DNA of 64,000 nt from Haliotis rufescens. Its lineage: Eukaryota. The notes under the pieces were generated by a model, which was not told the DNA's origin, did no database searches, and saw only the letters and a program-made list of their open reading frames with translations. The stretch's first letter is position 1. Every line of letters starts with the position of its first letter. This document shows, piece after piece, positions 358 to 56,156 of the stretch. A program made the position numbers and the translations under genes. The stretch covers positions 40,052,001-40,116,000 of the forward strand of contig NW_025964223.1 in NCBI RefSeq assembly GCF_023055435.1. Direction: 5' to 3'.

Positions 358-3300
358 TCATGACTTTAAGTCAGTTTGGACAAACTTGGCTGTGACAAGA
401 GCAACTGAAGAAACATGTCCCGCTGTCATGTTGTTAGAGAAGTGAATCTGTACTTGGTTAGGCCCGGTGGCAAACAGGGAGGTTGGGACAGCAAACTCCC
501 AGACCTCCCAAAAGGTGGTACTTCCAATCATGTTGGCATCATACAGCTTATAGAAAGATTCAAGGAGGTGGAGGTTCAAGGTAAGATATGATACACTGTT
601 TCTTCATTAATCGGCCAACTGGCAGAAACTCTCAGTCTGGCACTGTGATATTGACCATTTGGAAGAGCTATTACTGTTAAGGCGATATTGCCCTTGATTG
701 ATATAAGTGTATCAGCTCCGTAGTATGTGGTTTCATTGAGTGTGACATTAGGTAGTTGGTCTGAGGGGGTCTTGAATGTGAAGTGACATGTTGCTTCAGG
801 AGGAAGTTCAACAATTCCCTGGGTTTTCTGGATATCGAAGGTTTCATTGAATGTGATGACTGGGTACCAGTCGTCCTTGATGGTGATACAAGTAGCTTCT
901 CCATTGGTTGGTTTGATCCAGTCGTCTTCAAAGTCTAGCTTCACGGCCTGTGACTTCTGAGAATAGCTATGCAAAAGAATGACGGTTTCATTATGTAGGG
1001 AACTAGACATTGCTAACGGCGACACCGTTCGTTCCACTCCATCATACTGGCTGGTAGTTCTGATAAAGGAGTAGTCTGGCGTGAATTTGTACCAGAACTT
1101 GAAGACGTCGATGACACGTTTAGGTCGTCCTCGGTTAGTGAAAAGTTGCGAGTTGGGAAAAGGATATTCATTATTGGCTAAAAGAAACACCACTGTTCTG
1201 TCAATGTATTCCCTAAGACCTAGCTGGGTAAATCGGTGGGCATTGGAGTGGTATATTGTTGCAAAATCTACTATTGCTGATGGAGCAGTTGGGCTGATTC
1301 CTTTCACGATGTCGCGACCATACTCACTGATAACAAGGGGGACAATCTTCCCTGTCTTCAGAGAGGCATAATTTTCAACCAGGTCGACAAATGCTACTAA
1401 CCTTGCTTCATTCATCCCAGTGAAATTGTGAGATTTTCCCGAGACTATAAGTGAGTTGTACGAATGAAAGGAAAACACATCTAAATAGTCTAAAGTGAGG
1501 TCCATGAAATTTGCCACTGTTTTCCAGTCGGTAAAGTTGTTTCTGTCCGAATTTCTGGCGAAACCATCAAGTGTGGGACCAGTAACTTTGATGTTAAATC
1601 TTGCATGGAGTTTCTCCGCAACTGATTTGTGGAACGTGGCAACTGTTGTGAAATTCAAGATGTTAAATTTGGTGTCCGGTTCATTCATGGGTTCAATGTA
1701 GGGTGGGATCTGTCCTTTGGTGAAATCATAAACTCCTTGCACCATCAACATCATGAACTCTGCAGCAGCATCGACGTTGTTGGGGAATTGACCTGCATGT
1801 TCGGACTGGTTCATCCAACTCGGGTAAAACAAACCTGTAAATAGCATGTGAAAAAACACGTTCGTAAATGAACACAAAAGAAACGGTTTTCAATACTTGA
1901 AGCCTCAAATGTATGGCCTAATTAAGAATGATATATCATTGCCAAAGTCATCATCACATCTTGATTTGTTCTTCTGATTCATGTGTTTCAGTTTTATTAT
2001 GCTTAGTACTGTCCAATAGAAATAGATTGTTCTCTTCAGAATTTTTATTATCAAGAAGCATAACATACCACATGCCTCTCGACCTTCTTGTCTCATAGTG
2101 TCTCCTGTTTTGTAAAGCACTTCATTTAGGCCAAAAATGGTATAAATCATTGGAGCGTGATGTGTATTTTGAAAGTTCGCATCATCAGATAATTCCTTTC
2201 TACAAGTCACTATGTTACTATTGTATGTTATAATACGACCTTTTCTGCAATATCCTTACTTAAGAAAATCAAAAATAACATTACAGCCATATAGCGATTA
2301 TAAGTGAGTGAGTGGTTTTACGCCGCTTTTGGCAATGTTCCAGGGAAATCACGGCGGAGAACACCAGAAATGGGCTTCACACATTGTACCCATGTGGGGA
2401 ATCGAACCCGGCTCTTCGGCGTGACGAGCGAACGCTTCAACCACTGGGCTACCCCACCGCCCCTCGTGACTATCAAATGTTATGCATAATATATACATTT
2501 AAACAATAAAAGCCTCTCAACAAAGGACAGTAAAATAACTAGAACATCACAGATTTAAGTTTTAAACTAGCATACAACCATAAAAAGATAAAACTATATA
2601 TAACAATATAATATAAAAACGGCCCATAGATCGCCAGCAACGAAAGGTATTTCACCATAATAGGGACAATGGGGACTTACAGTACCTTTAATACCTGTAT
2701 GGACCCCAGCAGGATTTACATCATCCCTGTTGGCGATTATTGATCAATTTAGCCAAACATTAAGACAACACATGTGACAGAAATAAAACTACTTTGATAG
2801 GGGTGGTCTTACATACCCTCGCAGGGGGACAATACGTTTACACTACTTCAACCTCCTTCGAGGACACAGCCACTAAGAATCTCAGTTATTAAATTATAAA
2901 AAATAGTCCTTGATTATATCCAAAACATGTCAATCAAAATGTCTTGACCAATTCTATTTCTTTAAAAAACACACCAAGAATTAAATGAGAACTGATATAA
3001 TTGTTAAAAATATCATTTAGGGATGAAACTTTTAGTTGTCCCTTGTGATGGAAAATAAACATAAATAAACAATATATTGCCCGCTCAATAAGGAAGATAT
3101 TCATTTGATGTTGTGAAACAAACATCAAATGAAACCGTTATGTACAACATTGTATCCTGGTATATTTGATAACACTTGTTTGCGTATTGGACTATTTCGA
3201 TATATTATGGTATTTTTCCCTTTTTGGCTTTGTGCATTAATACTGTCTTACCTCTCGACATCATGATCATGTCGTTCTCATAACCACTGTTAATGTTAGC

Positions 3301-4698
3301 AAGGTACAAGGAAAACAGTTCCTTCTGCTTGGTGGCATTCTTCAAGTAGCTGGGATCTGGGTAGCCGCTACGGTTTGGATCCTCAGGCCACTGAATTGAA
3401 TATTTATTTTATCAAGTAAACATTCAGTTAGGAGAAGAACATGATGTGTCTTAAGGAGTTATTAAATATTCATACCTAGAAAATACAATCGCAGCCTATT
3501 TCTAAGTATGTTCAAACTGCTGTGAGGCTTTGGTGACGTCTCTGCGGAATGGTATGGCGTCATACGCTTCCATGACGACTTTCACGCAGCTAAATCTGAA
3601 AAGCAGTTTTTCTGACAAGTATTAGTCACGCCCATTAAATAACGAATTATAGTTCCCATGTCCAATGTCATGTTTCCAAATTTGGATTATGATACCTATG
3701 AACTGAAGTAACCATACGCAATGAAATGTTCCTTAGTACATGTAGTTCAAATCACATTTAACAGCGTGTTTCAACCAATCATAATGCGGCACATGCCCCC
3801 ATTTGTTTTGCAATGTATGTTAACATAAATATCATGTCGGCAGAATACCTAAAATCACACGATGTCACACTTCTTCTTATGTTCAGTGGTTGTGAAGAGA
3901 CTGAAGGTTTTTTTACATGCAATAACGCCCCGTGGATAAACAATTACTGATAACATTACTGACAGGACTTAAAACAATTACCATTTACACTGTATTCTGA
4001 TTTGTTTGGCTGTATAAAGTTATATATAATATTCCACTTAGTGACATTTTGTAAACATTTGTCAGTGCATATTAACAAAAACATTTATGTCAACCTGAAC
4101 AGCAGCGAAAATATGGCGTCAAGATTTATTTAGTCATTCTTATTTTCAGTTGTATTGACATTATATTTTCATTTCTGCTGTTGCATGTGGGCTATTGTTT
4201 GAAAGTAATTTGCTGTCAGTTCAGTAGCTAGGTTTAGTATCACGTGCCTGCACAGCAGAAATATATTTTTGCAACACGATATTTTAAGAAATATTGAAGT
4301 TCTTCCTGCTGTTTAGATCTCATTTGAAATGAACATATTATAAATAATAAAGTATAATCGTCACTGAACTTTCAATGTTAAGGTCCAATATCTCTATATA
4401 CAAATTGAATGTATTATCAAGTAAGTAGTATCTGGTATTATGTATGAGGTGATCTTACATCTTCGAAGAGACGATAACTAAAGCCATTGTTATTCCAGCG
4501 CCCAGCGTCAGTCCGAAGGTTCCGACATTCGGGAATAAGGGACTCCTGATCAAGGCTATTGTGCTTGTTCCACCTGTTACTGTCATAGCGAGCACTACCT
4601 CCCTGTGCCAACCATTGAGAGTGGATCGTCACCGTCGTGTCGCTGTACACACCGCCTATTGACAGGCTCAAAGTGAAATAGGCCAGCATCCATTTCAT
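358..4698 (-). pseudogene. GH86 beta-porphyranase/beta-agarase-like gene, copy 1; exons 4459-4698, 3252-3390, 358-1834; 1-bp frameshift near 600-603 (pseudogene, truncated allele or assembly error)
   Basis: Exon 1 MKWMLAYFTLSLSIGGVYSD...RLFED|GTAAG; exon 2 cag|WPEDPNRSGYPDP...MIMMSR-G|GTAAG; exon 3 cag|GLFYPSW...EPMNEP...FSFHSY...ISEYG. ORFs 576-1877 and 358-579 join only through a frame change; sequence near 595-610 (cactgtttcttcatt) is one base shorter than copy 6 (cactgtttgtttcatt). Confidence 0.8.
2304..2463 (-). mobile_element. tRNA-derived SINE, family A ((ACTC)n tail), in intron 2 of copy 1
   Basis: Reverse complement has A box TAGCCCAGTGGTTGAAGCG, B box GGTTCGATTCCC, body GAAGCCCATTTCTGGTGT and tail GCGGCGTAAAACCACTCACTCAC; homologous to 19660-19822 and 59088-59250. 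Confidence 0.85.
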
Positions 4699-4749
4699 TT
4701 TCTGTGAATTGTAAAGTTCACTGGATTGTGACCTTGGCGTAGTGTCGAA

Positions 4750-7780: not shown

Positions 7781-7799
7781 CTTTATAGGACTTTATTTT

Positions 7800-12075: not shown

Positions 12076-15000
12076 TCATTTGATGTCAGATGGGACAAGC
12101 TTGGCTGTGACAAGGGCTACCGCAGTCACATATCCTTCCGAATCTTTGTTGGAAAAGTTAACTTGGACCGTGATAGAAGTGGTGTTCAACAAGGTGGAAG
12201 GGACGAAAAACTCCCAAACATCCATGTAGTTGAAGATTTTACTGTTCTGTTTGTCTGAGTCGTACAGCTTGTAACAGGAGTAAAGAGGTTGGTGGTTAAA
12301 GGTAACAGATGACAGAATGTTTGTTTCATTGATGGGAAGACTCGCAGAAACTCGCAGTCTTGCGCTGTCGAATTCATCTTTTGGAAGAGCTATGGTTGTC
12401 ACAGCGATGCCGTCCTTGATGGGTATAACCATACCAGCTCCGTAGTATGTTGTTTCATTGAAAGTGTCTCTTGGCAACTGGTTTGAGGGAATCTTGAATG
12501 TATAGCGACATGTTGCTTCAGGTGGAAGTTCAACCATTCCTCCAGTATTACCGATGTCAAAGGGTTCGTTGAAGGTGATAATTGGATACCAGTTGTCCTT
12601 GATGGTGATACAAGTAGCTTCTCCTGTGATTGGTGTTATCCAGTCGTCTTGAAAAATTAATTTGACCATCTGTGATTGTTGAGAATAGCTGTGTAAGAGA
12701 ATGACCGTTTCATTACGTACAGAACTTGACATTGATAGCGGCGATACCGTTCGTTCCTGACCATCACATTTGCTGGCAGTTCTGATGAAGGAGTACTCTG
12801 ACGTGAAATTGTACCAAAATTTGAATACATCTGCATTCCTTGAGGCGTTTCCTTGGCGGGTGAAAAGTGACCAGTTGGAACCATTATTTCCAGGATCTTG
12901 TTCACTGCTTAAAAGAAACACCACCGATCTGTCAATGTATTCTCTGAGACCAAGTTGGGTGAACCTATGGGCATTAGACTGGTATATTGTTGAAAAGTCA
13001 ACTATCCCAGATAGAGCAGTTTTACTAATTCCTGCCACTCCCCCGCGACCATATTCACTGATAATGAGTGGGATTTTTTCCCCCTTCTTTTGATGAACAT
13101 AGTTTTCAATCAGGTCAACAAATGCTACCAGGCGTGCTTCATTTATACCAGTAAATCGGTGAGATTTCCCTGAAACAATAAGTGCGTTGTACGAATGAAA
13201 GGAAAACACGTCTAAATAGTCTAAAGTGATGTCCATGAACTCTACCAGTTTTGTCCAGAACGAAAAGTCGTTCCTGTCTACCACTGTGTTATATCCTGTC
13301 ATTGTCGGGCCAACCACTTTGATGTTAAACCTGGAATGGAGTTTCTCGGCAACTGTTTTGTGGAAAATGGCGACAGTGGTGGTGAAATTCATTATATCCT
13401 CTTTAACATCTGGTTCGTTGACGACCTCGAAGTATGGCGGAATCCGACCTTGAGTGTAGTCAAAGACTCCTTGCACCAGCAACAATATGAACTCTGAAGC
13501 AGCATCGATGTTGTTGGGGAATTGACCCTTATGATCGGACGTATTCATCCAGTTTGGCCAGTGAAGACCTTAAATCAATAATACAACATAAAACTGATTG
13601 ATAAATACATATGCCGTTTCTATAAGAGCTTACGCATGTATGTCCGTTTTAAAGACTGCCACTGTTTCCTTGACGATACAGGACGTCAAGCTGGCGATAA
13701 TATATGGGTATTAAGTAGTTGCTGTGCTGTGTAATTGCTGTGTAATCAACCAAATAAGACAAAGGCCGCCTGTTCTTGTATTTCCTTATTACAATCAATG
13801 AAGGACTATCTTTATATTCACAGAAAGTATTTAAGACAATTTGAATAATATTATGTTGAATGTTATAATTTCATGTTCAACTTTGTACACCACTATCCCA
13901 CATGACAGACTGAAGGTAAAACTCATTCCTTGATCCATGGGACTTTGTTTTAAATAACGTGTTGACCACAGATATAGTTACATGTCTATTTTCAGAGGTT
14001 CAGGTCAATTTGTCAAAATGGAAGCAAATGACATCTGAAGTTTACTGCAAAAACATTATCTGAAATGCTAGACATCCTTATTGATAATATCTATTTAACA
14101 TTTTGGGAAAAAACATTCAGGCAAGAAGTAGGCATCCCCATAGTCACCGATTCCGCTCCCCTCCTTGCTGATCTGTTTCTTTATTCATATGAATCAGAAT
14201 TTCTGCTCGGACTGGCAAAGTCAAACCAAGTTAATTTGGCCAGGAACTTTAACATAAACTTCAGGTATATAGATGATCTGATATCGTTCAATAACGGTCA
14301 AATTGCCAATTCCCTTACACCTATACTAGAAATGTAGGCGACCAGTGAGACCGCCTCATCTGTTTCATATTTGGATCTACACAAAAAGATTCTGAGTGAA
14401 AAAAAACACTCTCAACAAGACTGTATGACAAGAGGGATGACTTCAACTTTTCAAAAGTCAACATATCCTTTATTCCACAATTTTTGAGGTGCAATCTAGC
14501 ATACTCTTTCTACCAAGATTTCAAAGAGAACTATACAACTCTTGCCCAGAGGTTGTTTGATCAAGGTTACAACATTCAAGGCCTCTGTAAAACTTTAAAG
14601 GGTTTTATGGAAGGCAGACATGTCGAGGACATTTCAAAATTTGACAAAAATCAGTGATAAAAATTATGTCTGATGCAATGCTCTATTTGGACTTCTACCC
14701 TATGTTCACGTGTTTTCAGATGAACAATTGACTTGCCTTTGCAAGTGTTTGTGACGGATGCCACCGGTGGAGCAGAATATGTTAACCTCTTCGCGAACAC
14801 CTTGTATTATCACTATTTGATACTGATTCACAAACATATGGTCATGATATACTAGTAGTCGGAAACGTACAATCGACTCTGTTTTTAGCAGATATTGCTT
14901 ATGAATATGGAGAGGGTTTTGCCACGTTTTATTTATAAGTCCATTAATCTCACACCTATCGTTGGTAACTACACGTAAAGTACGTCCAGGCGATTTTGGG

Positions 15001-17839
15001 TTATTTTCTACCATCTGCACATCATTTGCTTCTCTCGTTCACAGAGGTCATAACATAAGAAGGCAATATAAAATGCGATCTTGACGTCCATGCATGATGT
15101 GTGATAGAGCAACTGCCATATATAGGTGCAATATCTATCGAACGCCTGACTTCGTTATTGCAGTGATTCGTGAGTGCATCTAATCTTCGAATTTGTCTAT
15201 TACAAATTGTTCGGACTTTCTGCGGCTATTACTATTGTGACGGGAAAGAAATATGAATCCCTCTACGTCCGTTTTAATAATATTACCAATCAAATAACAG
15301 CATTTGTTTCTGAATACTCTTACCTTTCATCATCATGATCATTTCATTCTTATAACCACTGTCAATGTTAGCAAGGTAATCGGAGAACCATTCCTGTTGC
15401 ACGCTGACGTTCTTCAGGTAGTTGGGGTCGGGGTAGCCACTTCGGTGTGCGTCTTCTGGCCACTACAATCAATATGCTTATTAGGCAAGGAGAATGTTAT
15501 TCCAAACAGTGCTACTTTGTGAATATTCGTCAATGCATATTAGCTTAATCATTTACTTTCAGTCTAAACATGGGTCAGGGTACCCTCTGGCCAATGTATA
15601 ACTTATATATGAAAATTTGGGTTTAGTATAATTAATCGCATATTAATGACAATTCACTGTTGTGCAATGTTTCCCAGTAATATAATACTATACTTGTATC
15701 ATGCATAAAAGGAAAAGGTTAATTCAATAATTGTCCAGTCATTTGTTACCTGTTCACTGGCAAGTGTACAAGTCCATATTAGTCTTAAGTAATTACTTCA
15801 TTTGTATGAGTGGATACGACCATGGGACATCTAGCAACAATTGTCTATCCCAATTAAAGAAAGACAAAGACTCTAAAACATAGTGTTTATTTCTTAGCAG
15901 GAGAATCGGCCTCAAAACATTCATCCCACCACATTCATACATTTATCGTATGCTACATCACTGTAGCTCTATAAATGTAAACTAATGTCTGTTTGCAATA
16001 TTCATGACATTACTGTCAAAACGAACCCTCGAAGCCATACATAACAAGACAGGATGAGCAAATGAATGACACAGAAATGCTTCATGTTTTCTGTCTCAAC
16101 TGCCGGGCAAAAGACCCTTATCACCTTGTACCGCAGCTCCATAAAAAGAAACAAAAAAGGTGTTATCGATATGATGATTATTTTAATGAAAGGAATAATT
16201 TTTTATGTCTGTACACATTGCAATGCTATATCGATAGTGCACTTGCCAAAAGTCCGAGCGAAAGAGACACGGGATCAAAAGAAAAGACGAATCCACTCAA
16301 AAGGTGCTCATAAAGTCAAATCATGTGACAAGACATGTCCCTAGTAGCGTGTGTGACCATCCCCTGCATCAATGCGCGCCAAAATAGTCTCCTCGTGGAT
16401 GTCGTTAGTCGCCGGATGACGTCATTAGGAATTCTGCGCTACTCGTCCAATAAAACCTGTTCAAGCTGCTGTCTGTTTGCTGGGGGAGATACGCGTTGTC
16501 TCATCTGTCGATCACGATGATCCCAGAGATCCTCTATGGGATTCATGTCTGGAGAACATGCTGGCCAAGGCAATACGTTGACGTTAACGTTGTGCAGATA
16601 TTGCTGAACACGTCTGGCGGTATGAGATCGTGCATTATCCTGCGGCAAAAGAGTACCCCTTGCCCGTCCACGTAATTGGCACTAGAGCAGATCGAACGCC
16701 TCATCTCTGTATCTTTGGCAATTAAGATTCCCACGGATGATGACAAGCCTTGTTGTCCTCTGACCGCAAATACTGCCCGATACCATAACGCTGCCTCCAC
16801 CATACGGCTGCTCATCTTGGATGCAGTAAGATGCCAGTCGCTCGCCCCTACGACGATAAACACGGACTCGGCCATCATTTCTGATCAAGTAAAAGCGACT
16901 TTCATCTGGGAACAGCACCCTTTCCAAATCACGCCGCTGCCACCGACGTACAGTTCTTGCCCATTGTAATGCGTTGACGTAGAAGATGGATCAATGCCGT
17001 TCCATGGAAGGGGCGGTAGGCTCTGATACCACCAATGCGGAGTCATCGTAAGGGTGTTCATCTGCTGATGGGGTGTCCCATTGGCGTCGCTGCCGTTGAC
17101 GTCGCTGTCACGTATCGGATGTAGCGGTCTTCAACTGGTGTTGTGACTCTTTGTGTCTGGCCTATTTGCTGATACAGGCTCAACTAGTTGCTGATACTGG
17201 TTTGACTGCAGTTAAAGGTTCTTGCAAACTGCCGTTGAGAGGCCCCTATATCGGCTATACCAACAGCTCTGTCACGTTCCTCTTGTGTGAGTATCGGCAT
17301 TTCTCTGCTGTTCTTTTTGATGCTGCATCCTTCCTCTACCCCACACCGGTATTTATGCAACAATTATGCACGAACACTTTTTACAGTTCCCCAAAATACT
17401 GTTTCCGATTTATCATGACTGCACTACACTCACTAAAACGTGACTTCCATTGTGCACATGGTGTGTGTTGGTGAATGTTTTCTGATAACATTCTAACTTA
17501 TCGCACTTATCGCCTTTAATTCAGTGATACGTTTCTTTAGCCCGGCATTTTACAATGTGACTTATTACGATAATATAATGGATCAAATTAGAAAGAAAAT
17601 CTCACCACTCGGAAGAGAGTAAAATCTTCGTGTATCCAGCGGCCGCTGTCAGTCCGAAGGCGGCGACAGTTTGCAATACGGGACTCCTTTTCCAGGCCAT
17701 TGTGCTTGTTCCATCTGTCACTCTCATAGCGCACACTACCCCCCTGTGCCAGCCACTGAGGATAGACCGTCACAGTCGTGTCACTATATACACCACCTAT
17801 TACCAGGCTCAGGGTGAGAAAGACCAGTGTCAATTTCAT
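12076..17839 (-). CDS. Secreted GH86 beta-porphyranase/beta-agarase-like glycoside hydrolase, copy 2 (most divergent); exons 17606-17839, 15324-15462, 12076-13568; 621 aa
   Basis: Open spliced frame with GT-AG sites (phases 0 and 1); signal peptide MKLTLVFLTLSLVIGGVYS; EVVNEPD (Glu codon 13414-13416), DVFSFHSY, PLIISEYG (Glu codon 13054-13056), TYYGA..IPI, ARLRVS and VQVNFS...GYVTAVAL resemble bacterial GH86 enzymes. Confidence 0.88.
13990..14900 (+). mobile_element. Penelope-like retroelement reverse transcriptase fragment plus 3' region in intron 2 of copy 2
   Basis: MLDILIDNIYLTF...FRQEVGIPIVTDSAPLLADLFLYSYESEF...FRYIDDLISFNN (YIDD motif); downstream SYLDL and LYDKRDDFNF remnants with frameshifts; 3' motif GTGACGGATGCCACCGGTGGAGCAG recurs at about 57640. 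Confidence 0.8.
16098..17551 (-). mobile_element. Degenerate Tc1-family (DD34E) transposon in intron 1 of copy 2
   Basis: Frameshifted transposase: VLFPDESRF...GRVRVYRRRGER...GGGSVMV, QDNARSHTAR, LPWPACSPDMNPIEDLWD, GDGHTRY*; degenerate TIRs tgccgggcaaaagacccttatcac (about 16101) and gtgatacgtttctttagcccggca (about 17524-17547). Confidence 0.88.
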
Positions 17840-17879
17840 TGTCACCGAAATGTAATGTGTCATCACAAAGACATGAACA

Positions 17880-32670: not shown

Positions 32671-32816
32671 NNNNNNNNNNNNNNNNNNNNNNNNNNNNNN
32701 NNNNNNNNNNNNNNNNNNNNNNNNNNNNNNNNNNNNNNNNNNNNNNNNNNNNNNNNNNNNNNNNNNNNNNNNNNNNNNNNNNNNNNNNNNNNNNNNNNNN
32801 NNNNNNNNNNNNNNNN
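32671..32816. other. Assembly gap (N run)
   Basis: Run of n characters. Confidence 1.
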
Positions 32817-36859: not shown

Positions 36860-39800
36860 TCATGACTTCAAATCAGAGGGAACAAGTTTGGCTGTGACAA
36901 GGGCTATTGAAGAAACATATCCCGCGGTCATGTTTTTGGAGAAGTGAACCTGTATCTGGTTAACGCCGTTGACAAACAAGGAGGCAGGGACAGCAAACTC
37001 CCAGACCTCCCAATAGGTGGTACTGCCAATCATGTTGGCATCATACAGCTTATAGAAAGAGTCAAGGGGGTAAAGGTTGAAGGTAAGATATGAAACACCG
37101 TTTGTTTCATTGATCGGCCAACTGGCAGCAACTCTCAGTCTGGCACTGTGATATTGGCCATTTGGTAGAGATATTATTGTCGTGGCGATATTGCCCTTGA
37201 TTGGTATAAGTGTATCAGCTCCGTAGTATGTGGTTTCGTTGAGAGTGACATTAGGTAGTTGGTCTGAGGGTGTCTTGAATGTAAAATGACATGTTGCTTC
37301 AGGAGGAAGTTCAACCATTCCATGGGTCTTCTGGATGTCGAAGGGTTCATTGAAGGTGATGACTGGGTACCAGTCGTCCTTGATGGTGACGCAAGTAGCT
37401 TCTCCAGTGGTTGGTTTGATCCAGTCGTCTTCAAAGTCTAGCTTCACGACATGTGACTCCTGCGAATAGCTGTGCAAGAGAATGACAGTTTCGTTATGCT
37501 GAGAACTAGACATTGCTAACGGCGACACCGTTCGTTCCTCTCCATCATACTGGCTGGTAGTTCTGATAAAGGAGTAATCTGACGTGAATTTGTACCAAAA
37601 CTCGAAGACGTCGATAACTCTTCTGGGTTTTCCTTCATTAGTGAAAAGAGACCAGTTGTAATATGGATTTTGTATATTGGCTAAAAGGAACACCACTGCT
37701 CTGTCAATGTATTCCCTAAGACCGAGCTGGGTAAATCGGTGGGCATTGGAATGATATATTGTCGAAAAATCTACTATACCCGATGGAGCATATTTGTCAA
37801 TTCCTATCACAGTATCGCGGCCATATTCACTGATAACAAGGGGGACAATTTTCCTTTTCTTCAGATAGGCATAGTTTTCAACCAGGTCGACAAATGCTAC
37901 TAATCGTGCTTCATTCATACCTGTAAACTTGTGTGATTTCCCCGAAACAATAAGTGAGTTGTAAGAATGAAAGGAAAACACGTCTAAATAGTCGGAAGTG
38001 ACGTCCATGAAATCGGCCACTTTCTTCCAGTCTGTAAAATTGTTTCTGTCCGAATTTCTGGCAAAACCGTCAAGTGTAGGACCAGCAACTTTGATGTTAA
38101 ACCTTGAATGGAGTTTCTCTGCAACTGATTTGTGGAACAAAGCAACAGTTGTGAAATTCAAGATGTTAAATTCGGGGTCCGGTTCATTCATGGGTTCAAT
38201 GTAGGGTGGAATCTGTCCTTTGGTGAAGTCATAAACACCTTGCACCATCAACATCATGAACTCTGCAGCAGCATCGACGTTGTTGGGGAATTGTCCTGCA
38301 TGTTCAGACTGGTTCAACCAGTTTGGCCATTTAAGAGCTAAAATCAATGATACAACAGAACATGAATTTGATTTATGCATAAAATATCATTGTCAAAGTC
38401 GTGTACGAATGTCAGTTTCTACTTCTGAATCACGTTTGTCAGCTTTATGATGCTTAGCCCTCTTCACAAATTATCAAGAAGCTTACATCAGTACAATACG
38501 CATTTCGACCTTCTTGTCTCATAGAGTCTCCTGTTTTGTATGACACCTCATTTTAAGAATAAATGGTATAAATCATTGGAGTGTATTGTGTATTTTGTAG
38601 GTTAGCATCAGAAGATAATTCTTTTCGTCATTTAATTATGTTAATATTGCATGTTCTGCAATTTCCTTTTACTTAAGAAAATTAATCATAAAAACACCAA
38701 GGACAATAAGGAAAATATTCATTCGATGTTCTGAAACAATTATCAAATGAAACTGTTGTGAACAACATTGCATCCTGGCATATCTGATAACTAAAATGAA
38801 ATGTAGAATTGTAAATTTCAAGCTTTAAGGTAGGAGTAAAATTCAGATATGCATTTATTAGGTGCCCAATACGAAGAGATGAAGAGGCGTAGGGTCAGTG
38901 CACAAATACTGTCTTACCTTCCGACATCATGATCATGTCGTTCTCATAACCAGTGTTAATGTTAGCAAGGTACACCGAAAACAGTTCTTTCTGCTTTGTA
39001 GCATTCTTCAGGTAGCTGGGATCTGGGTAGCCGCTACGGTTCGGGTCCTCTGGCCACTGAATTATTTTTTTATTTAATCCAATAAACATTCAGTTAGGAG
39101 TTGAACATGATGTGTCTTCCGATATGAAGGCGTTATTAAATGTTCGTACCTGGAAATTACATTTGTTACAATTTTCGACGATATGGCTGAAATACTGCCG
39201 ATGTGACATTAAATTTTAACTCACTCACTCACTCACTCACTCACTCACTCACTCACTCACTCACTCACAATTTTCGACAACCATGTAAACAGTGACATCT
39301 GTAGTAATTTCAACTACATTGAAAAAACAATAGCAGTCTACTTTTTCATATGTTCTGTTGTGTGACTTAGGTTACGTCACTGGAATGGTATAGTGTCATA
39401 TGCTTCCATAACGACTTACCCTTAGAGAATTATAAACCAAAAAGCTAAATCTGAAAAATCATTTGTTCTGACAAGTATTAATCAAAGGCATTAAAAATGA
39501 ATGCGGTAGTTCCTTCTTCCAATGACATCTTTTCCAAATTTGGATTATGATGCAGTTTCAAATTCGATTAAAAAACATTTCCAGCCAATCGGACTTCAGC
39601 AAATGTTCCCATATATTTTACAATGAAAAAATATAGCATGAATATCATGTCAGCAAAATAGCTGAAATCTTTGATACCACACTGCTTCTTATGTTCAATG
39701 TGTGTGAATAGACTTCAGTTGTTTCACAAGTAAAAACACTATGTGGATAGACATTGATTAAATTATCACGGGCGCCTAAAACAATTAAAATTTACACTGT

Positions 39801-41053
39801 ATTCTCATAATAACTATTGTGTCATTAATGTTGAAGCATCTTGTTTATTTTCTAGTTTTTCAGTAGCAAAAAGTGAGTGAGAATGGTTTTTGCGCCGTTT
39901 TTTTTCTCAATATTCCAGCAATATCACGGAGGGAGACAGAAATGGGAATCGAAGCCAGGTCTTCGGCTAGACGAACGAAAGCTTTAACCACGAGGCTACC
40001 CGACCGCCCCTCTAGGGTAACTACATGGTCACCGTACCTGAACTGTAAGACTATTATGGGGAGAGATCATGAGAACAAAGTGTTATTTGCTTTTGAAAAA
40101 GGCATAAAGAGTATACGGTTTTATATTATACTTCGTCTATGCATTTTAACACAAACATTTATGTCAGCCTAAATAGCAGCGATAATATGGTGCCAGAAAT
40201 TGATTCATCGTCGTTCTGATTTTCAATGGTAATTTTATTTTCGTTACTGGTGTGACATTTTGGGCAATATTTCACAGTTATTGGTCGTGGGCCCTCCTGT
40301 TAGTTCAGTAGTAATATATAGTAGCACGTGTCTGCACAATAGAGTTTTACATTATGTTCCAATTGGAGCCTTTTTGTCAACATTCCTCAAAGCATATAAA
40401 CACAAACATTTATGTCAGCCTAAATAGCAGTGATAATATGGCGTCGAGAAGTGATTTATAAAGCGTCTAATGTTCAATGGTAATGATATCTTATTTTCAT
40501 TTGTGTTGTACAATGTTTGGGCAATATGTTTCCAAGGCCATTCCTGTCAGTTCAGTTGCTAAATATAATAACAAGTGCTTGCACAACAGAATATATGTTT
40601 TTGCAACAGAATGTGGAGTCTTTCTGAGAAACAATAAAGTTGATCCTTTGGTTCATGAATCTGAGAAAAAGTTAATAAAAGATAATAATTTGAAATAAAT
40701 AGATTCTATCACAGCATAATCGTCGCAGGATTTCAACGTGTTAAAGTCCACTATCTGTGAACTAGTATCAGCTAAGTAAGTAGTATCTGGTATTATGTAT
40801 AAGGTGATCTTACATCTTCGAAGAGACGATAACTTAAGCCATTGTTATTCCACCGTCCGCCATCAGTCCGAAGGCTCCGACATTTGGGAATAAGGGACTC
40901 CTGATCCAGGCCATTGTGCTTGTTCCACCTATTACTGTCATAGCGAGCACTGCCTCCCTGTGCCAACCATTGAGAGTGGATCGTCACCGCCGTGTCGCTG
41001 TATACACCGCCTATGGACAGGCTCAAAGTGAAATAGGCCAATATCCATTCCAT
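36860..41053 (-). CDS. Secreted GH86 beta-porphyranase/beta-agarase-like glycoside hydrolase, copy 5; exons 40814-41053, 38918-39056, 36860-38337; 618 aa
   Basis: Open spliced frame with GT-AG sites; signal peptide MEWILAYFTLSLSIGGVYS; EPMNEPD, FSFHSY and PLVISEYG intact. Confidence 0.9.
39180..39268 (+). repeat. SINE/LINE 3' tail with (ACTC)n microsatellite in intron 1 of copy 5
   Basis: gatatggctgaaatactgccgatgtgacattaaa followed by about 12 ACTC units; flanked by the direct repeat caattttcgac. Confidence 0.75.
39873..40010 (-). mobile_element. SINE family A, internally deleted
   Basis: gtgagtgag...gcgccgttttt...atattccagcaatatcacgg...gaaatgggaatcgaagccagg...gctacccgaccgcccc. Confidence 0.75.
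40150..40630. repeat. Diverged tandem duplication (about 250-bp period) in intron 1 of copy 5
   Basis: acaaacatttatgtcagcctaaatagcag(c/t)gataatatgg at about 40151 and 40403. Confidence 0.75.
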
Positions 41054-41344
41054 GTTCTGTGAAATGTAAGTTAAGGCTTTCTTTAATGATGACTTGTGAC
41101 CTTGGCGAATTGCATCATCATCCAGGCTTTACATATATGGCTAAAATTATATAAGGTCTATACAAACAGTTGTTCATAGAAGCGTGTACGTTCGCAAATG
41201 AAACATAACACCAGATTACAGAGATATAATGGTTTGAAACCACTTCTCTATAATTTGTAACAGCGCGAATTTCAAGACGACATCAAGTCTCTTTATTATG
41301 TAAATATTGAGTAATTGTTACATATAATACGTAATATGTTCATA

Positions 41345-46974: not shown

Positions 46975-49950
46975 TCATGACTTCAAATCAGATGGGATAG
47001 ACTTGGCTGTAACAAGAGCAAATGAAGAAACATATCCTGCTGTCATGTCGTTAGAGAAGAGAACCTGAACCTGGTTAGCCCCAGTGACAAATAAGGATGT
47101 GGGGACTACAAACTCCCAAACCTCCCAATAGGTGGTGCTGTTAAACTTGTCGGAATCAAACAGCTTATAGTAAGAGTCAAGGCGGTGAACGTTGAAGGTT
47201 AGATATGTTACACTGTTTGTTTCATTAATCGGCCAACTGGCAGAAACTCTCAGTCTGGCACTGTAATATTGTCCATTTGGTAGATATATTACTGTTGAGG
47301 CGAATTTGTCCTTGATTGGTATAAGTGTATCAGCTCCGTAGTATGTGGTTTCGTTGAGAGTGACAGAAGGCAGTTTATTTGAAGGGGTCTTGAATGTAAA
47401 ATGACATGTTGCTTCAGCAGGAAGCTCAACAATTCCATGGGTCTGCTGAATGTCGAAGGTTTCATTGAAGGTGATGATCGGGTACCAGTCGTCATTGATG
47501 GTAACGCAAGTAGCTTCTCCAGTGGTTGGTTTGATCCAGTCGTCTTCAAAGTCTAGCTTCACGGCCTGTGACTCCTGCGAATAGCTGTGCAAGAGAATGA
47601 CCGTTTCGTTATGCTGAGAACTTGACATTGCTAACGGCGACACCGTTCGTTCCTCTCCATCATACTGGCTGGTAGTTCTGATAAAGGAGTAGTCTGACGT
47701 GAATTTGTACCAGAACTCGAAGACGTCGATAACTCTTCTGGGTTCTCCTTGGTTAGTGAAAAGAGACCAGTTGTAATATGGATTTTGTATATTGGCTAAA
47801 AGAAACACCACTGCTCTGTCAATGTATTCCCTGAGACCGAGCTGGGTAAATCGATGGGCATTGGAATGATATATTGTCGAAAAATCTACTATACCTGATT
47901 GAGCATATTTGTCAATTCCTAACACAATATCGCGGCCATATTCACTGATAACCAGGGGGACAATTTTCCTTTTCTTCAGATAGGCATAATTTTCAACCAG
48001 GTCGACAAATGCTACTAATCGTGCTTCATTCATACCAGTAAGATTGTAAGATTTCCCCGAAACAATAAGTGAGTTGTACGAATGAAAGGAAAACACGTCT
48101 AAATTGTCTAAAGTGACGTCCATGAAATTGGCCACTATTTTCCAGTACGTGAAGTTGTTTCTATCTGACGATCCAGTTTCCCCGTCGAGTGTAGGACCAG
48201 CAACTTTGATGTTAAACCTTGCATGGAGTTTCTCCGCAATTGATTTGTGGAACATGGCTACAGTCGTGAGGTTCAAGATGTTATAGTTGACTTCCGGTTC
48301 ATTCATGGGTTCAATGTAGGGTGGGATCTGTCCTTTGGTAAATTCGTAAACTCCTTGCACCATCAGCATCATGAACTCAGCAGCAGCATCGACGTTGTTG
48401 GGGAATTGACCTGCATGTTCGGACTGGTTCATCCAACTCGGGTAAAACAAACCTGTAAAAAGCATGAGAAAAAGAAATATGTACAAAACAAATTTCGTCG
48501 TAAATGAATGTAAAAGAAACGGTTTTGAATGCTAGTTATGATATGAAATGTTAACACATTGAAGCTAAGAATGTATGGACTAACTAAGGATAACATATCA
48601 TTGCAAAAGTCATGGTATCATCTCAGTTTCTTCTTCCGAAATAGCTTTATTATGTCTATTGAAAATAGTAGATGTTCCCTCCAGAAATTATTATTATGAA
48701 GAAGCATGACATGTGTACCATGTGCCTTACGACCTTCCAGTCTCGAAGTGTTTTTCAAGGCACCTCATTTTGGCAATAAATTGTACAAATGCTTGGAGTT
48801 TATTGTGTAAGTCACCCTCATCAATTACTTTATATGTACATCTAACAGGTGTTAATAGTGCATGTTTTAATATGACTTTTTGTGCAATATCCTCACTCAA
48901 GATAATAAAATCATAAATAAACAATGTATTGCCCGGAAAATAAGGTTATTATTAACTTGCTTTGAAACAAATATCAAATAAAACTGTTATGTACAACACT
49001 GTATCCTAACTAAAATGAAATGTAGAATTGCAAATTTCAAGCTTTGGGGTTAAAGTAAAATTAAGTTGGGCCTTTAATGGTTGCCGAATCTGAAGGGTTG
49101 AAAAGTCCCAGAATAATTATGCATTCTTTATTCTCAACAAGGCCAAAGAACATTGTTTGCCTAATGTCCTATTTTAATCATTGTATTTTCTATCTTTGGC
49201 TTAGTGCACAAATACCTTCTTACCTTCCGACATCATGATCATGTCGTTCTCATAACCACTGTTAATGTTAGCAAGGTATAGGGAAAACAGTTCCTTCTGT
49301 TTTGTGGCATTCTTCAGGTAGTTGGGATCTGGGTAGCCGCTTCGGTTTGGGTCCTCTGGCCACTGATCACAATAGAATTTTTATTCGATCAAGTAAACAG
49401 TTAGGAGAGGGAAATTATGTGTCTTTCGATTTGGAAGTGTAATTTGGACTATATCACCTTTGAACTAACGTATCCAACGTATCAAATTCCAATTAAGAAC
49501 ATTCAACCACTCGGCATGCAGTACATGCTCCCATACACTTTACAATCTTATGTGTTTTAGCATAAATATCACGTCAGCAAAGTAGTTAAAATTATACGAT
49601 GTCACACTGGATTAATGTTCAGTGTTTGTGAAGAGACTGCAGTTGGTTGACATATAACCCTCCGTGGATAGACACTGACTGGTTAAATGACTGGTATAAG
49701 GTGATCTTACATCTTCGAAAAGACGATAACTTAAGCCATTGTTATTCCAGCGCCCAGCGTCAGTCCGAAGGCTCCGACATTTGGGAATAAACGACTCCTG
49801 ATCAAGGCCGTTGTGCTTGTTCCACCTATTACTGTCATAGCGAGCACTGCCTCCCTGTGCCAACCATTGAGAGTGGATCGTCACCGTCGTGTCACTGTAC
49901 ACACTGCCTATGGACAGGCTCAAGGTGAAATAGGCCAGTGTCCATTCAGA
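46975..49950 (-). CDS. GH86 beta-porphyranase/beta-agarase-like gene, copy 6; exons 49711-49950, 49224-49362, 46975-48452; frame open but start codon position reads TCT (possible pseudogene)
   Basis: All splice sites and catalytic motifs (EPMNEPE, PLVISEYG) intact; 5' reads cag CAA TCT GAA TGG ACA CTG GCC TAT versus cag AAC ATG GAA TGG ATA TTG GCC TAT in copy 5; intron 1 shortened to 348 bp. Confidence 0.75.
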
Positions 49951-53222: not shown

Positions 53223-53877
53223 AAAGAAAACTTAAGCTTCTCTCTTCTATGATTTGTGTAAGGAGAAATAATTTCAAAATGGCGGCCCGTTTTCGTTTAA
53301 TAGAAGTTGTTGACGACTATTGATGTCTCTTAAGTCGTAATATCAATATATTAGACTTATTAGTGATGACTTAAATATGTATTTTCAAATACTTATTAAT
53401 TTTCATTGATATAGATGTAGTTTTCACGATAATATTGAGTGGCGAGCAGATTCTATATTTGCACGGATTACTGAAAAATAAGTGTCACAGGCATACTGTC
53501 TATAATGCTCATGTCTTGCTGTCAATGATTATGGCTACTCCAAAGTCTATTGTACGATTTCGACTTCATCATACAATGTGTCTATGAATCACAACCAAAT
53601 AGTGATGAAACGAAAGGTCCTCTCCAAGCTTTGTGGCGTCAAGGTCACGTCTTAATCTTTATCATTATGGGCGTCGATTTAACTGATAGAGCATATCAGA
53701 TGTTGGTGACGTGTATTGGTTATCTCCCCTGCCTCGAATTGTCGGTGTGCCCTGGGTCTTGGCCGGGTGGTTTTCTGGACCCGTTAAACCTTATCTGTAA
53801 TGTCATGAGTCTTTCTGTAGGTGGTTCATTTTGACAAATACACCCCACACGAACAAAACTGCACATCTTAATCATTA

Positions 53878-56156
53878 CGAATAGCTGTGCAAGAGAATGA
53901 CCGTTTCGTTATGCTGAGAACTTGACATTGCTAACGGTTCGTTCCTCTCCATCAAGCTGGCTGGTAGTTCTGATAAAGGAGTACGTGAATTTGTACCAGA
54001 ACTCGAAGACGTCGATAACTCTTTTGGGTTCTCCTTGGTTAGTGAAAAGTGACCAGTTGTAATATGGATATTCTATGTTGGCTAACAGAAACACCCTGAG
54101 ACCGAGCTGGGTAAATCGGTGGGCATTGAAGTGATATATTGTCGCAAAATCTACTATCCCTGGAGGAGTATAAGTTCAAAAACTGACTTAAGTCTGAGTT
54201 TTTACTCAAATCTGAGAAAACTCAGCAAAATGCATTTCTCCAACCAAACTGAGTTCAATTTTCGACTCAAACTGAGTTCGAAACCACATAAAACTTAAGT
54301 AAGCCTACATGGTTACTTAAGTTTTTATTCGGACAAAAATGGCGATTGCTAATAGACGTAAGCGGAGATCGAGAAGGAGACAGGTTATTTCCAGGCGGCT
54401 TACCGATCGTGAAAACCCACTGGAATACATGTCGAACGATGATTTGTTCACGTTGTCAATGAGTAAAATTCGCTCTTCTGCAGTCCAATTCGGCCTCAGT
54501 TTGCTTTCAGCCATCGCGGATATGTTAGCAGACGACAAAACGTAACATCACGCGCTTCCGTGTTTACATTGGAAACGGAAGTCAAATCTCGCGCCAAGGC
54601 CGCTTACATCGCATAAAAAAACAAACTGAGATCGAACTTAAGTCCTGAGTTAAAAACTCAGCTGAGTTTTTGCTGAGTTTGATTCGAGAAATGCAGTTGA
54701 GTAAAAAGCTTTATCCGTACCAGTAGAATTGTGAGATTTTCCAGAAACAATAAGTGAGTTGTACGAATGAAAGGAAAACACGTCTAAATAGTATCTAAAA
54801 AGTATCGTCCATGAAAGTGGCCACTTTTTTCCAGTATCTAAAATTGTTTCTATCCTACGCTCCAGTTTCTCCATCAAGTGTAGGACCAGGAACTTTGATG
54901 TTAAATCTTGCATGGAGTTTCTCCGCAACTGATTTGTGGAACATGGCAACAGTTGTGAAATTCTGGATGTTAAATTTGGGGTCCGGTTCATTCATGGGTT
55001 CAATGTAGGGTGGGATCTGTCCGATGGTGAAGTCGTGAACTCCTTGCACCATCAACGTCATGAACACAGCAGCAGCATCGACGTTGTTGGGGAATTGACC
55101 TTCATGTTCAGACTGGTTCATCTAACTCGGATAGAACAAGCCTGAAAAATGAATTTGTTCGTAAACGAATATAAAAGAGATGGCTTTGAACACTTGATAT
55201 GATATGAATTTTGGTCTTGTTTGATGTTAAGAATGTGTGTCCTAATTAAGAATAAAGCATAATTGTCAAAGTCATAGTCACATCTTAGTTTCTTCTTCTG
55301 AATCACGTTTTACAGCTTAATAATGCTTATTCATCTTAATTGTCCTCCAAAAAGTATGATTATCAAAAAGCTTAACATCGGTACAATGCGCATTTCGACC
55401 TTCTTGTCTCATATTGTCCCGAATATGTTTGAGTGTAAACTGCAAAGGGTATAAAGTTGTATATCATTTTACACTTAGGACCATTTTGTGAACATTCGTC
55501 AATGCATATTGACACATATATTTATGTCAGCCAAAATATGGCATATATAGCTCTGGTTTTAAATGGTAATGACCTAAATTTTGATATCTTTTGTGACATT
55601 TTGGGCAATATTTGAAAGTTATTGGTGCTGTACCAGTCCTGTCTGTTCAGTAGTGAGATATAGTTACATATAGTTTATATAGAACATATAGCTTTTGTAA
55701 CAGGATGTGGAGACATTCTAAGAAGCAATCGTGGTTTTTTACTGAAGTTGGTGAATCTGAGTTTAACCTGAACAGCAAATGATCCTCCTATTCGTGGAAC
55801 AGATAACGGTTATAAATGAACAGATTCCATTACAGTATCATCGTCACTTGAATTTCAACCTCTTAAGGTCCAGTGCCTCGCTGAAGTCGTGACAACAAAG
55901 TAAGTTATATCAAGTAAGGCGTTTGAGATGATCTCACATCTTCGAAGAGACGATGATTGAGGTCATTGTCATACCACCGCCCGCCGTCAGTCCGAAGTCT
56001 CCGGCGGTTGGACCCCTGATCCAGGCCGTTGTGCTTGTTCAACCTCTGTCATAGCGAGCACTACCTCCCTGCGCCAACCGTTGATGGTGGATCGCCACCG
56101 TCGTGTCACTGTATACACTGCCTATTGACAGCAAAAGAGACCAGTGCCCATTCCAT
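53878..56156 (-). pseudogene. GH86-like pseudogene, copy 7: frameshifted exon 1 (55938-56156), exon 2 absent, exon 3 (55141-54719 and 54170-53878) with stops, Harbinger insertion and 3' truncation
   Basis: MEWALVSF then deletion/frameshift; W>TAG at the exon 3 start; TAG at 54855; EPMNEPD retained but the segment carrying ISEYG is lost; sequence ends at LHSYS and is fused to the intergenic block. Confidence 0.9.
54171..54718. mobile_element. Internally deleted PIF/Harbinger transposon
   Basis: Plus strand MAIANRRKRRSRRRQVISRRLTDRENPLEYMSNDDLF (Harbinger transposase-like N-terminus) converges on minus strand MAESKLRPNWTAEERILLIDNV (Myb/SANT-like N-terminus); subterminal AACTCAG/CTGAGTT and TGCATTTCTC/GAGAAATGCA inverted repeats at both ends. 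Confidence 0.75.

What the first reader, a model, noticed from the sequence alone, without database searches (positions are those of the whole stretch)
358..56156. Tandem array of intron-containing, secreted GH86 porphyranase/agarase-like genes in an animal genome: a candidate horizontally acquired red-seaweed digestion system
Seen: seven paralogous three-exon genes or pseudogenes encoding signal-peptide proteins of about 620 aa, embedded in animal SINEs and LINEs next to NDUFB4. Established: the motif order EDPxRxGYPDP / EPxNEP (acid-base) / FSxHxY / DLVENY...PLxISEYG (nucleophile) / YY...IPI / LRVS / GxVSSxxL matches clan GH-A family GH86 beta-agarases and beta-porphyranases. That family is characterised mainly from marine bacteria and from Bacteroides plebeius BpGH86A. 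Algae-grazing molluscs have endogenous alginate lyases, cellulases and laminarinases, whereas agar/porphyran breakdown is usually credited to gut bacteria. Inference: a bacterial galactanase was transferred into a grazing mollusc (probably abalone), gained introns and was amplified, giving the host its own agar/porphyran digestion. Automated annotation may already label these genes, but I know of no functional description.
Basis: partly seen in the sequence, partly recalled or inferred. Interest (0 to 1): 0.93.

Follow-up and report, generated by a model that had tools for sequence, protein, structure and literature searches.

The report
Abalone's own GH86 seaweed-galactanase gene array
The red abalone chromosome carries a tandem array of spliced, transcribed genes for secreted enzymes of glycoside hydrolase family 86, a family otherwise known from bacteria that cut red-seaweed agar and porphyran. 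The same intron-bearing gene occurs in mussels, pearl oysters and chitons, so molluscs acquired it long before abalones existed.

Summary
The window is Haliotis rufescens chromosome DNA. It holds seven minus-strand paralogues, each with three coding exons: four intact, one frameshifted, one with an early stop, one wreck. They lie next to NDUFB4, and at least one intron carries an interspersed repeat. Both N gaps are intergenic.

GH86 membership is well supported. A mollusc-only profile hits only GH86 crystal structures over nearly the full length of two of them (E 1e-37). The AlphaFold model matches them at TM 0.74-0.81, and both catalytic Glu motifs are kept. RNA-derived contigs from two studies show GT-AG splicing. 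dN/dS is 0.21-0.29.

The window holds the NDUFB4-side end of an 18-locus array. The genome holds at least 60 loci.

The family is also in Mytilus, Pinctada and the chiton Liolophura. It forms one clade, and intron 1 sits at the same place in bivalves. The acquisition therefore predates the mollusc classes, and abalone only expanded the family. The nearest outgroups look like protist sequences, one labelled as a choanoflagellate, so the donor is unresolved.

Activity on red-algal galactans is inferred, not shown. RefSeq already names the genes "beta-porphyranase A-like". No paper describing them was found. This scan had already noted the family four times elsewhere in this genome.

The parts
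361..4698 (-). Copy 1. Exon 1 is 4459-4698, exon 2 about 3252-3390, exon 3 about 361-1834. A frameshift near 600 truncates the C-terminal beta-sandwich. It is annotated as the 545-aa protein P0022.
12079..17863 (-). Copy 2. Exon 1 is about 17600-17863, exon 2 about 15324-15462, exon 3 12079-13568. An in-frame stop lies just upstream of 13548, at the start of exon 3. The annotated isoform P0040 skips the acid/base region. This copy is probably a pseudogene or a non-catalytic variant.
20200..24310 (-). Copy 3, apparently intact. Exon 1 is 24071-24310, exon 2 about 23490-23628, exon 3 20200-21677.
28314..32556 (-). Copy 4, apparently intact. Exon 1 is 32317-32556, exon 2 about 31884-32022, exon 3 28314-29803. 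All coding exons lie between the two N gaps.
36860..41056 (-). Copy 5, equal to P0001 (618 aa). Exon 1 is 40814-41053, with the exon starting at 41056 after a 5'UTR intron. Exon 2 is 38918-39056. Exon 3 is 36860-38337, stop codon included.
   Evidence: (joints 38337>38918 and 39056>40814, which read GT..AG on the minus strand)
46975..49947 (-). Copy 6, equal to P0002 (622 aa). Exon 1 is 49711-49947; the usual ATG is lost and the start lies further upstream. Exon 2 is 49224-49362. Exon 3 is 46975-48452.
53864..56149 (-). Copy 7, a pseudogene. An exon-1 remnant lies at 55938-56149. Exon 2 is absent. Exon-3 fragments at 54707-55142 and 53864-54172 carry stops, and the nucleophile motif is lost.
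27453..27619 (.). Assembly gap in the spacer downstream of copy 4. No exon or frame crosses it. Continuity across it is untested.
32671..32816 (.). Assembly gap 115 bp upstream of the copy 4 ATG. Its flanks are collinear with the copy 3 unit. The promoter and 5'UTR of copy 4 may lie in it.
60152..62216 (+). Host gene NDUFB4. Its first two coding exons lie within the open frames 60152-60334 and 62019-62216. It bounds the array on this side.
59346..59654 (+). Fragment of a LINE-type endonuclease/reverse-transcriptase between the array and NDUFB4.
39944..40016 (.). Core of an interspersed repeat inside intron 1 of copy 5. It is dispersed over many chromosomes.
   Evidence: (depth spike)

Best explanation
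These are endogenous abalone genes. They lie at the NDUFB4-side end of an 18-locus tandem array on one chromosome, within a family of at least 60 loci genome-wide. They encode secreted retaining glycoside hydrolases of family GH86, about 68 kDa and probably N-glycosylated.

Each protein has a (beta/alpha)8 barrel followed by two beta-sandwich domains. Glu178 in the NEP motif would act as acid/base. Glu297 in the SEYG motif would act as nucleophile.

The most likely role is endo-hydrolysis of beta-1,4 links in agar-type galactans of dietary algae (agarose, porphyran, funoran) in the gut lumen or digestive gland. That would complement the animal's known endogenous alginate lyases, cellulases and laminarinases.

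The gene entered the mollusc lineage once. It probably came by horizontal transfer from a microbe, at or before the last common ancestor of chitons, gastropods and bivalves. It gained two coding-region introns early. Abalones later amplified it by tandem duplication, under purifying selection, with occasional decay to pseudogenes.

Shown here: endogeneity, splicing, transcription, family membership, conserved catalytic residues, the mollusc-wide clade, shared intron positions and the expansion.

Inferred: secretion, substrate, tissue of expression, and the direction and donor of the transfer.
For: Family membership:
- Exon 3 alone hits BpGH86A at 8e-10.
- A mollusc-only profile hits only GH86 structures: 8h97 at 2.5e-37, 5ta1 at 1e-36, 4aw7 at 1e-28. 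The first two are matched over nearly the full length. No other chain, GH39 included, reaches E 0.01.
- The Glu of ISEYG aligns with the residue mutated in BuGH86 E322Q, since 5ta0 reads ISQY there.
- The AlphaFold model has pLDDT 89.7. Its top seven Foldseek hits are all GH86 at TM 0.74-0.81. The next best is GH30 at TM 0.4.
- Divergent paralogues pass the Pfam BPA_C threshold.

Endogeneity:
- NDUFB4 and a LINE fragment flank the array, and a dispersed repeat lies in an intron.
- GC content matches the surroundings.
- Introns are GT-AG.
- Spliced contigs appear in runs of two studies.
- The GH86 of an abalone-gut bacterium shares only 29% identity over 140 aa.

Constraint: dN/dS is 0.21-0.29 at dS 0.16-0.83.

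Expansion: 71 matches in the own genome.

Age:
- Mytilus, Pinctada and Liolophura homologues exist.
- The mollusc clade has SH-aLRT 100, with chiton and bivalve subclades.
- Haliotis monophyly is not rejected, p-AU 0.42.
- Intron 1 is at the same site in bivalve contigs, whose open frames read through into Val-Arg or Val-Ser as GT-type splice donors would translate.

Leader peptides are present in all members examined.
Against: - No enzymatic assay exists. Pfam finds nothing in the window's own subfamily, which is the most derived one.
- Filter-feeding bivalves carry the gene, so red macroalgae cannot be the only substrate.
- The tissue of expression is unknown, because run labels are coded and the runs are only guessed to be RNA.
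- The tree is unrooted. Placement of the eukaryote clade inside the bacterial sequences has only 82-93 support.
- Three of the seven copies in this window are damaged.
- The AlphaFold alignment included bacterial GH86 sequences, which may favour that fold.
Confidence: 0.72

Rival explanations
1. The proteins are true GH86-fold hydrolases, but their natural substrate is not red-seaweed agar or porphyran. Candidates are microalgal or biofilm exopolysaccharides, other sulfated galactans, or an endogenous molluscan galactan or mucus polymer. The abalone expansion would then reflect diversification on such substrates.
For: The family is present in the filter feeders Mytilus and Pinctada. Identity to characterised GH86 enzymes is only 17-19% in the structural alignment. 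Abalone subfamilies differ strongly in predicted charge (pI 5 versus 8) and in number of glycosylation sites, which suggests functional divergence. Substrate-subsite residues were not examined.
Against: By my own knowledge of CAZy, every characterised GH86 acts on agar-type galactans. The three solved enzymes found here are named as a beta-agarase, a beta-porphyranase and one crystallised with neoagarooctaose. The largest expansions are in macroalgal grazers. Chitons, which graze on algae, also carry the family.
Confidence: 0.2
2. The gene descends from an older eukaryotic GH86 lineage. It was either inherited vertically from a holozoan ancestor and lost in most animals, or passed from a protist to an early mollusc. 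It was not transferred directly from a bacterium.
For: The sister groups of the mollusc clade (SH-aLRT 99-100) are EukProt transcript P0091 and a group holding a Picozoa single-cell record and metagenome proteins. P0091 has a signal peptide and 17 N-glycosylation sequons. A fragment from the choanoflagellate Diaphanoeca grandis is 34-40% identical to members of the second group.
Against: Transcriptomes and single-cell genomes of bacterivorous protists often contain prey or contaminant sequences. Branches are long and flagged as possible long-branch joins. No other animal phylum appeared among the 195 hits from 1.84 billion representatives, so the vertical version needs very many losses.
Confidence: 0.15
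3. This was a recent, abalone-specific transfer from gut or epiphytic bacteria.
For: Abalone guts hold agarolytic bacteria with GH86 genes, for example Agaribacterium haliotis.
Against: That bacterial GH86 is only 29% identical, over the catalytic core alone. Homologues in three mollusc classes form one clade with a shared intron position. Paralogue dS reaches 0.8, and abalone subfamilies are only 35% identical to each other.
Confidence: 0.03
4. The array is bacterial contamination or a misassembly, not animal DNA.
For: Two scaffold gaps lie within the array.
Against: The evidence for animal DNA is strong:
- Spliceosomal introns are confirmed by spliced contigs.
- A host gene and animal repeats lie in the introns and flanks.
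- GC content is host-like.
- The family is present in chromosome-scale assemblies of four Haliotis species.
- The flanks of the second gap are collinear with a paralogous unit.
Confidence: 0.01

Closest known systems
BuGH86 from Bacteroides uniformis (PDB 5ta1, 5ta0, 5ta5) and Aga86A_Wa (PDB 8h97), both GH86 beta-agarases
   Same: The architecture matches over nearly the full length: a (beta/alpha)8 barrel plus two beta-sandwich domains (TM 0.79-0.80). The NEP acid/base and SE[YF]G nucleophile motifs align, and the nucleophile matches the E322Q site. Profile E-values are about 1e-37.
   Different: Identity is only 17-19%. The abalone genes are animal-encoded with introns, a eukaryotic leader peptide and N-glycosylation sequons. 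They lack a carbohydrate-binding module, a T9SS sorting domain and a polysaccharide-utilisation-locus context. They exist as dozens of paralogues. Their activity is untested.
BpGH86A beta-porphyranase from Bacteroides plebeius (PDB 4aw7)
   Same: It is the best single-sequence hit of exon 3 (8e-10), has the same fold (TM 0.74-0.81), and the C-terminal BPA_C domain is shared. It is the source of the RefSeq name 'beta-porphyranase A-like'.
   Different: The mollusc profile aligns only from residue 171 onward. Nothing here shows a preference for porphyran over agarose or funoran.
Endogenous algal-polysaccharide enzymes of abalones and sea hares: PL14 alginate lyases, GH9 and GH45 cellulases, GH16 laminarinases, GH5 mannanases. 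This list rests on my own knowledge and on PMC11025796 and PMC4123733 as listed.
   Same: The concept is the same: secreted digestive CAZymes encoded by the herbivorous mollusc itself. Horizontal transfer is discussed for some of them.
   Different: No GH86 or any agar/porphyran-active enzyme has been described among them. No paper linking GH86 to an animal was found. The copy number here, at least 60 loci, is far larger.

Membership tests
Glycoside hydrolase family 86 (CAZy GH86, clan GH-A) | Significant sequence similarity to characterised GH86 catalytic modules, better than to any other GH family | tested here: met
   Exon 3 alone hits 4aw7 at 8e-10. The mollusc-only profile hits 8h97 at 2.5e-37, 5ta1 at 1e-36 and 4aw7 at 1e-28, with no other family at E 0.01. 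The nearest ESM Atlas clusters are beta-porphyranase A clusters.
Glycoside hydrolase family 86 (CAZy GH86, clan GH-A) | Three-domain fold: a (beta/alpha)8 barrel followed by two beta-sandwich domains (Pfam Porphyrn_cat_1 and BPA_C) | tested here: met
   The AlphaFold model has pLDDT 89.7. Its top seven Foldseek hits are all GH86 at TM 0.74-0.81, and the next family reaches TM 0.4. BPA_C is above threshold in paralogues P0044, P0074 and P0083. Porphyrn_cat_1 is below threshold. The window's own subfamily gets no Pfam hit.
Glycoside hydrolase family 86 (CAZy GH86, clan GH-A) | Clan GH-A catalytic pair: the acid/base Glu in the N-E-P motif after strand 4, and the nucleophile Glu after strand 7 | tested here: met
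   E178 and N177 are invariant, and E297 is at least 90% conserved, across 38 mollusc and microbial sequences. E297 aligns with the BuGH86 E322Q site. Both motifs are present in copies 1-6. Copy 7 has lost the nucleophile motif.
Glycoside hydrolase family 86 (CAZy GH86, clan GH-A) | Endo-beta-hydrolysis of agar-type galactans (agarose, porphyran, funoran) | not testable with these tools
   This needs a recombinant or native enzyme assay.
Horizontally acquired gene domesticated in an animal genome | Physically integrated in host DNA, with host-type gene structure and transcription | tested here: met
   NDUFB4 and a LINE fragment flank the array, and a dispersed repeat sits in an intron. Introns are GT-AG. 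Spliced contigs are seen in two studies.
Horizontally acquired gene domesticated in an animal genome | The phylogeny places the animal clade inside the diversity of a non-animal donor group, and the gene is absent from most other animals | tested here: inconclusive
   The mollusc clade has support 100, and all other animals are absent among the 195 hits. However, the trees are unrooted, nesting inside the bacterial-like clades has only 82-93 support, and the nearest sisters look like protists.

The most novel reading that the evidence does not exclude
GH86 was already present, with its two coding-region introns, in the last common ancestor of living molluscs. It belongs to a wider, so far unrecognised eukaryotic branch of GH86 shared with choanoflagellate-like marine protists. 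Host-encoded digestion of agar-type algal galactans would then be an ancestral molluscan trait dating to around the Cambrian. It would have been lost in most lineages and re-expanded to at least 60 genes in abalones, rather than being a service provided by gut bacteria.
Probability: 0.4. Interest if true: 0.8.

Novelty: new member of a known kind. Interest (0 to 1): 0.62.

Why it matters
Breakdown of agar and porphyran in abalone guts is normally credited to bacteria (PMC5870069). A large, constrained, transcribed host-encoded GH86 family makes the question of host versus microbiome directly testable with recombinant enzymes and tissue expression.

It would add the first animal clade to a glycoside hydrolase family regarded as bacterial. 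It documents a very old gene acquisition shared by three mollusc classes, followed by one of the larger CAZyme expansions reported in an animal.

It also offers eukaryote-expressed agarase or porphyranase candidates for seaweed processing, and possible markers for diet and growth traits in abalone aquaculture.

Tried and rejected
The genomic context of the unnamed relatives P0085, P0086, P0090, P0103 and P0237 could not be read, and the EukProt species of P0091 stays unknown.
- The search for related loci with alignment A1 failed because no stretch was conserved enough. With P0096 it found no genome relative. With P0094 it gave a single locus, in Agaribacterium haliotis. The bacterial donor group was therefore not named.
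- The 72-row tree under the mixture model did not finish. The careful LG+G4 search also did not finish, and its quick tree was used instead. The mixture model was then run on 38 rows.
- Pfam on the window's own proteins gave only sub-threshold noise.
- No tRNA-like SINE heads were found by ARAGORN.
- Ten inter-genic ORFs of 98-137 aa had no Pfam match.
- Seven literature searches and one full-text term check found no description of GH86 in any animal.
- The joined spliced model of the window's exons was not sent to any search tool. Exon 3 was searched by reference, and the database protein P0001 stood in for the whole protein. P0001 is identical to copy 5 over both matched stretches.
- The 5'UTR exon indicated by a loose end at 41056 was not mapped.
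- The N gaps were not filled.


Full report
**What is in the window**

Six long minus-strand open frames of 433-536 aa recur every 8-10 kb. A search with one of them returned a 100% identical protein, P0001, named "beta-porphyranase A-like isoform X2 [Haliotis rufescens]", on a 63.3-Mb contig. The window is therefore red abalone chromosomal DNA, at G000:C445:40052001-40116000.

Mapping P0001 back onto the window shows seven copies, all on the minus strand:

| Copy | Coordinates | State |
|---|---|---|
| c1 | 361-4698 | Frameshift near 600; annotated as a 545-aa product |
| c2 | 12079-17863 | In-frame stop at the start of exon 3; the annotated isoform skips the acid/base region |
| c3 | 20200-24310 | Intact |
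| c4 | 28314-32556 | Intact |
| c5 | 36860-41053 | Intact; equals P0001 |
| c6 | 46975-49947 | Intact; equals P0002 |
| c7 | 53864-56149 | Wreck: no exon 2, several stops |

Each copy has three coding exons of about 240, 139 and 1475 nt, with GT donors and AG acceptors at conserved places.

**The gaps, tested first**

The N run at 27453-27619 lies about 700 bp downstream of the c4 stop. The run at 32671-32816 lies 115 bp upstream of the c4 ATG. No exon or reading frame crosses either one.

The two flanks of the second gap map in the same order and orientation onto the neighbouring c3 unit, where they are about 0.7 kb apart. The join looks right, but the written length may be too short. The left flank of the first gap is unique, so continuity there is untested. 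Nothing was filled in.

**Host context**

NDUFB4 exons lie on the plus strand within the open frames 60152-60334 and 62019-62216 (PF07225). A LINE endonuclease fragment lies at 59346-59654. A roughly 70-bp core in intron 1 of c5 is dispersed over many chromosomes. GC content is uniform at 36-41%, apart from one 2-kb bin at 0.46.

**Transcription and splicing**

Contigs of four public runs from two studies of the same organism were laid on c5. They show two joints: 38337>38918 and 39056>40814. The skipped parts begin CT and end AC on the plus strand, which is GT..AG on the gene's strand.

Loose ends in a third run carry the exon 1 / exon 2 junction. A loose end at 41056 points to a further 5'UTR intron. 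In two of the runs, intron depth is 0-7 against 50-370 over exons.

The runs are only guessed to be RNA, and their tissues are coded. Still, spliced forms can only come from transcripts.

**What the protein is**

- Exon 3 alone hits BpGH86A (4aw7, 8e-10), a GH86 agarase (8h97) and BuGH86 (5ta1).
- A profile built from molluscan sequences only (A2) hits exactly four PDB sequences, all GH86. The E-values are 2.5e-37, 1e-36, 4e-36 and 1e-28. The first three are matched over nearly the full length. No other chain reaches E 0.01, GH39 included.
- In that alignment the Glu of ISEYG sits where 5ta0, the BuGH86 E322Q mutant, reads Q. It is therefore the nucleophile position.
- N177 and E178 of the NEP motif are invariant across 38 mollusc and microbial sequences.
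- An AlphaFold model has pLDDT 89.7 and pTM 0.91. Its top seven Foldseek hits are all GH86 structures at TM 0.74-0.81. The next family, GH30, reaches TM 0.4. The input alignment contained bacterial GH86 sequences, which is a caveat.
- Pfam finds nothing in the window's own subfamily. BPA_C is above threshold in more conservative abalone paralogues.
- All members have a hydrophobic leader of about 19 aa directly before the first conserved strand. P0001 has 11 N-glycosylation sequons.

**Selection and family size**

Pairwise dN/dS among the exon 3 sequences of c1-c6 is 0.21-0.29, at dS 0.16-0.83. These are old duplicates kept under purifying selection.

A six-frame search of the whole assembly gave 71 matches:
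- 18 loci lie in one array at 39.93-40.11 Mb. The window is its NDUFB4-side end.
- A second array of about seven loci lies at 45.28-45.44 Mb on the same chromosome.
- Further clusters lie on at least seven other contigs, at 33-48% identity.

Some unplaced contigs may be haplotype duplicates, so "at least 60 loci" is approximate.

**Distribution and age**

A search of 1.84 billion representatives gave 195 hits. Named relatives occur in:
- four Haliotis species;
- five Mytilus species;
- the pearl oyster Pinctada imbricata and the chiton Liolophura sinensis.

No other animal phylum appeared among these hits.

Trees by FastTree (189 rows), IQ-TREE LG+G4 (72 rows) and IQ-TREE LG+C20 PMSF (38 rows) all recover one molluscan clade with support 100. 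In the last tree, chitons (98) and bivalves (100) are each one clade. Three abalone clades sit in a basal polytomy. An AU test does not reject abalone monophyly (p 0.42).

Intron positions give an independent line of evidence.
- Both coding introns lie at the same codon and phase in abalone subfamilies that are only 35-48% identical.
- Short ORFs called on bivalve contigs (P0150, P0158, P0123) follow exon 1 up to the same residue. They then run into Val-Arg or Val-Ser, as GT-type splice donors would translate.
- ORFs called on contigs from a chiton-like source (P0085) and an unplaced source (P0087) start a few codons before the WPxW motif, where abalone exon 3 begins.

The intron-bearing gene therefore predates the divergence of the mollusc classes. 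Abalone did not acquire it; abalone expanded it.

**Origin**

The non-animal diversity of the family is large. The nearest named clusters are Bacteroidota and Planctomycetota.

The immediate sisters of the mollusc clade (support 99-100) are of a different kind. One is EukProt transcript P0091, which has a signal peptide and 17 sequons. The other is a group holding a Picozoa single-cell record and metagenome proteins. A Diaphanoeca grandis (choanoflagellate) fragment is 34-40% identical to members of that group.

These branches are long and may include contaminants. Horizontal acquisition remains the most economical reading, given the absence from other animals. The donor, and whether it was a bacterium or a protist, is open.

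A GH86 from the abalone-gut bacterium Agaribacterium haliotis is only 29% identical, over the catalytic core alone. This excludes contamination or a recent transfer from such bacteria.

**Function**

By my own knowledge of CAZy, every characterised GH86 cleaves agar-type galactans. The solved structures found here are named as a beta-agarase, a beta-porphyranase and an enzyme crystallised with neoagarooctaose. The catalytic machinery is intact, the proteins look secreted, and abalones and chitons graze on algae. I therefore rate digestive endo-hydrolysis of agar-type galactans as most likely.

Two observations keep a different or broader substrate range open, at about 0.2. The family occurs in filter-feeding bivalves. 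Abalone subfamilies also differ sharply in predicted pI, 5 versus 8.

**Novelty**

RefSeq already labels the genes automatically. Seven full-text searches and one full-text term check found no paper that links GH86 to any animal. The abalone microbiome literature credits agar and porphyran breakdown to bacteria.

This scan had already noted the same family at four other places in this genome, one of them followed up. The present window is therefore not an independent discovery.

**Left out**

The joined spliced model of the window's exons was not sent to any search tool. Exon 3 was searched by reference, and the identical database protein P0001 was used for whole-protein work.

Noticed in passing
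window 42916-43017, 34061-34162 and 7029-7205 (minus strand): Isolated exon-1-like fragments, 35-70% identical to the first 35-70 residues of P0001, lie in the spacers upstream of copies 5, 4 and 1. They look like relics of partial duplications.
   Followed up: no
P0001 and P0002 versus P0044, P0076 and P0084 (abalone subfamilies): The window's subfamily is acidic (predicted pI 5.1-5.5) with 11-12 N-glycosylation sequons. The other abalone subfamilies are basic (pI about 8) with 3-7 sequons. This may reflect specialisation by compartment or pH.
   Followed up: partly
L005:3437-5479 (Agaribacterium haliotis strain feces2): A bacterium isolated from abalone faeces carries a typical bacterial GH86, with Porphyrn_cat_1 and BPA_C domains. 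It is only 29% identical to the host enzyme, over the catalytic core alone. Host and gut microbe each have their own GH86.
   Followed up: yes
P0103, P0243 (Picozoa single-cell record and metagenomes): This 879-aa GH86-like protein carries a fragment of a GH3 N-terminal domain at its C-terminus. Identical copies recur in several metagenomes. The organism is unknown.
   Followed up: partly
window 49947-50050 (copy 6 start): The usual ATG of exon 1 is lost in copy 6. The annotated protein P0002 starts five residues earlier, presumably in the upstream exon.
   Followed up: no
window 16001-18000: GC content is 0.46, against 0.36-0.41 elsewhere. The region lies around exon 1 of the damaged copy 2. 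ORFs there have no Pfam match.
   Followed up: no
P0088, P0089 (Mytilus gene models): Two Mytilus gene models fuse GH86 exons with a sulfotransferase (named CHST1) or with a DDE transposase domain. These are probably annotation chimeras. A neighbouring sulfotransferase could still be worth a look.
   Followed up: no
window 41269-41400 and 39981-40141: Contig depth is extremely high (10^4 and above) in all four runs. This marks highly expressed or very abundant repeats beside and inside copy 5.
   Followed up: partly
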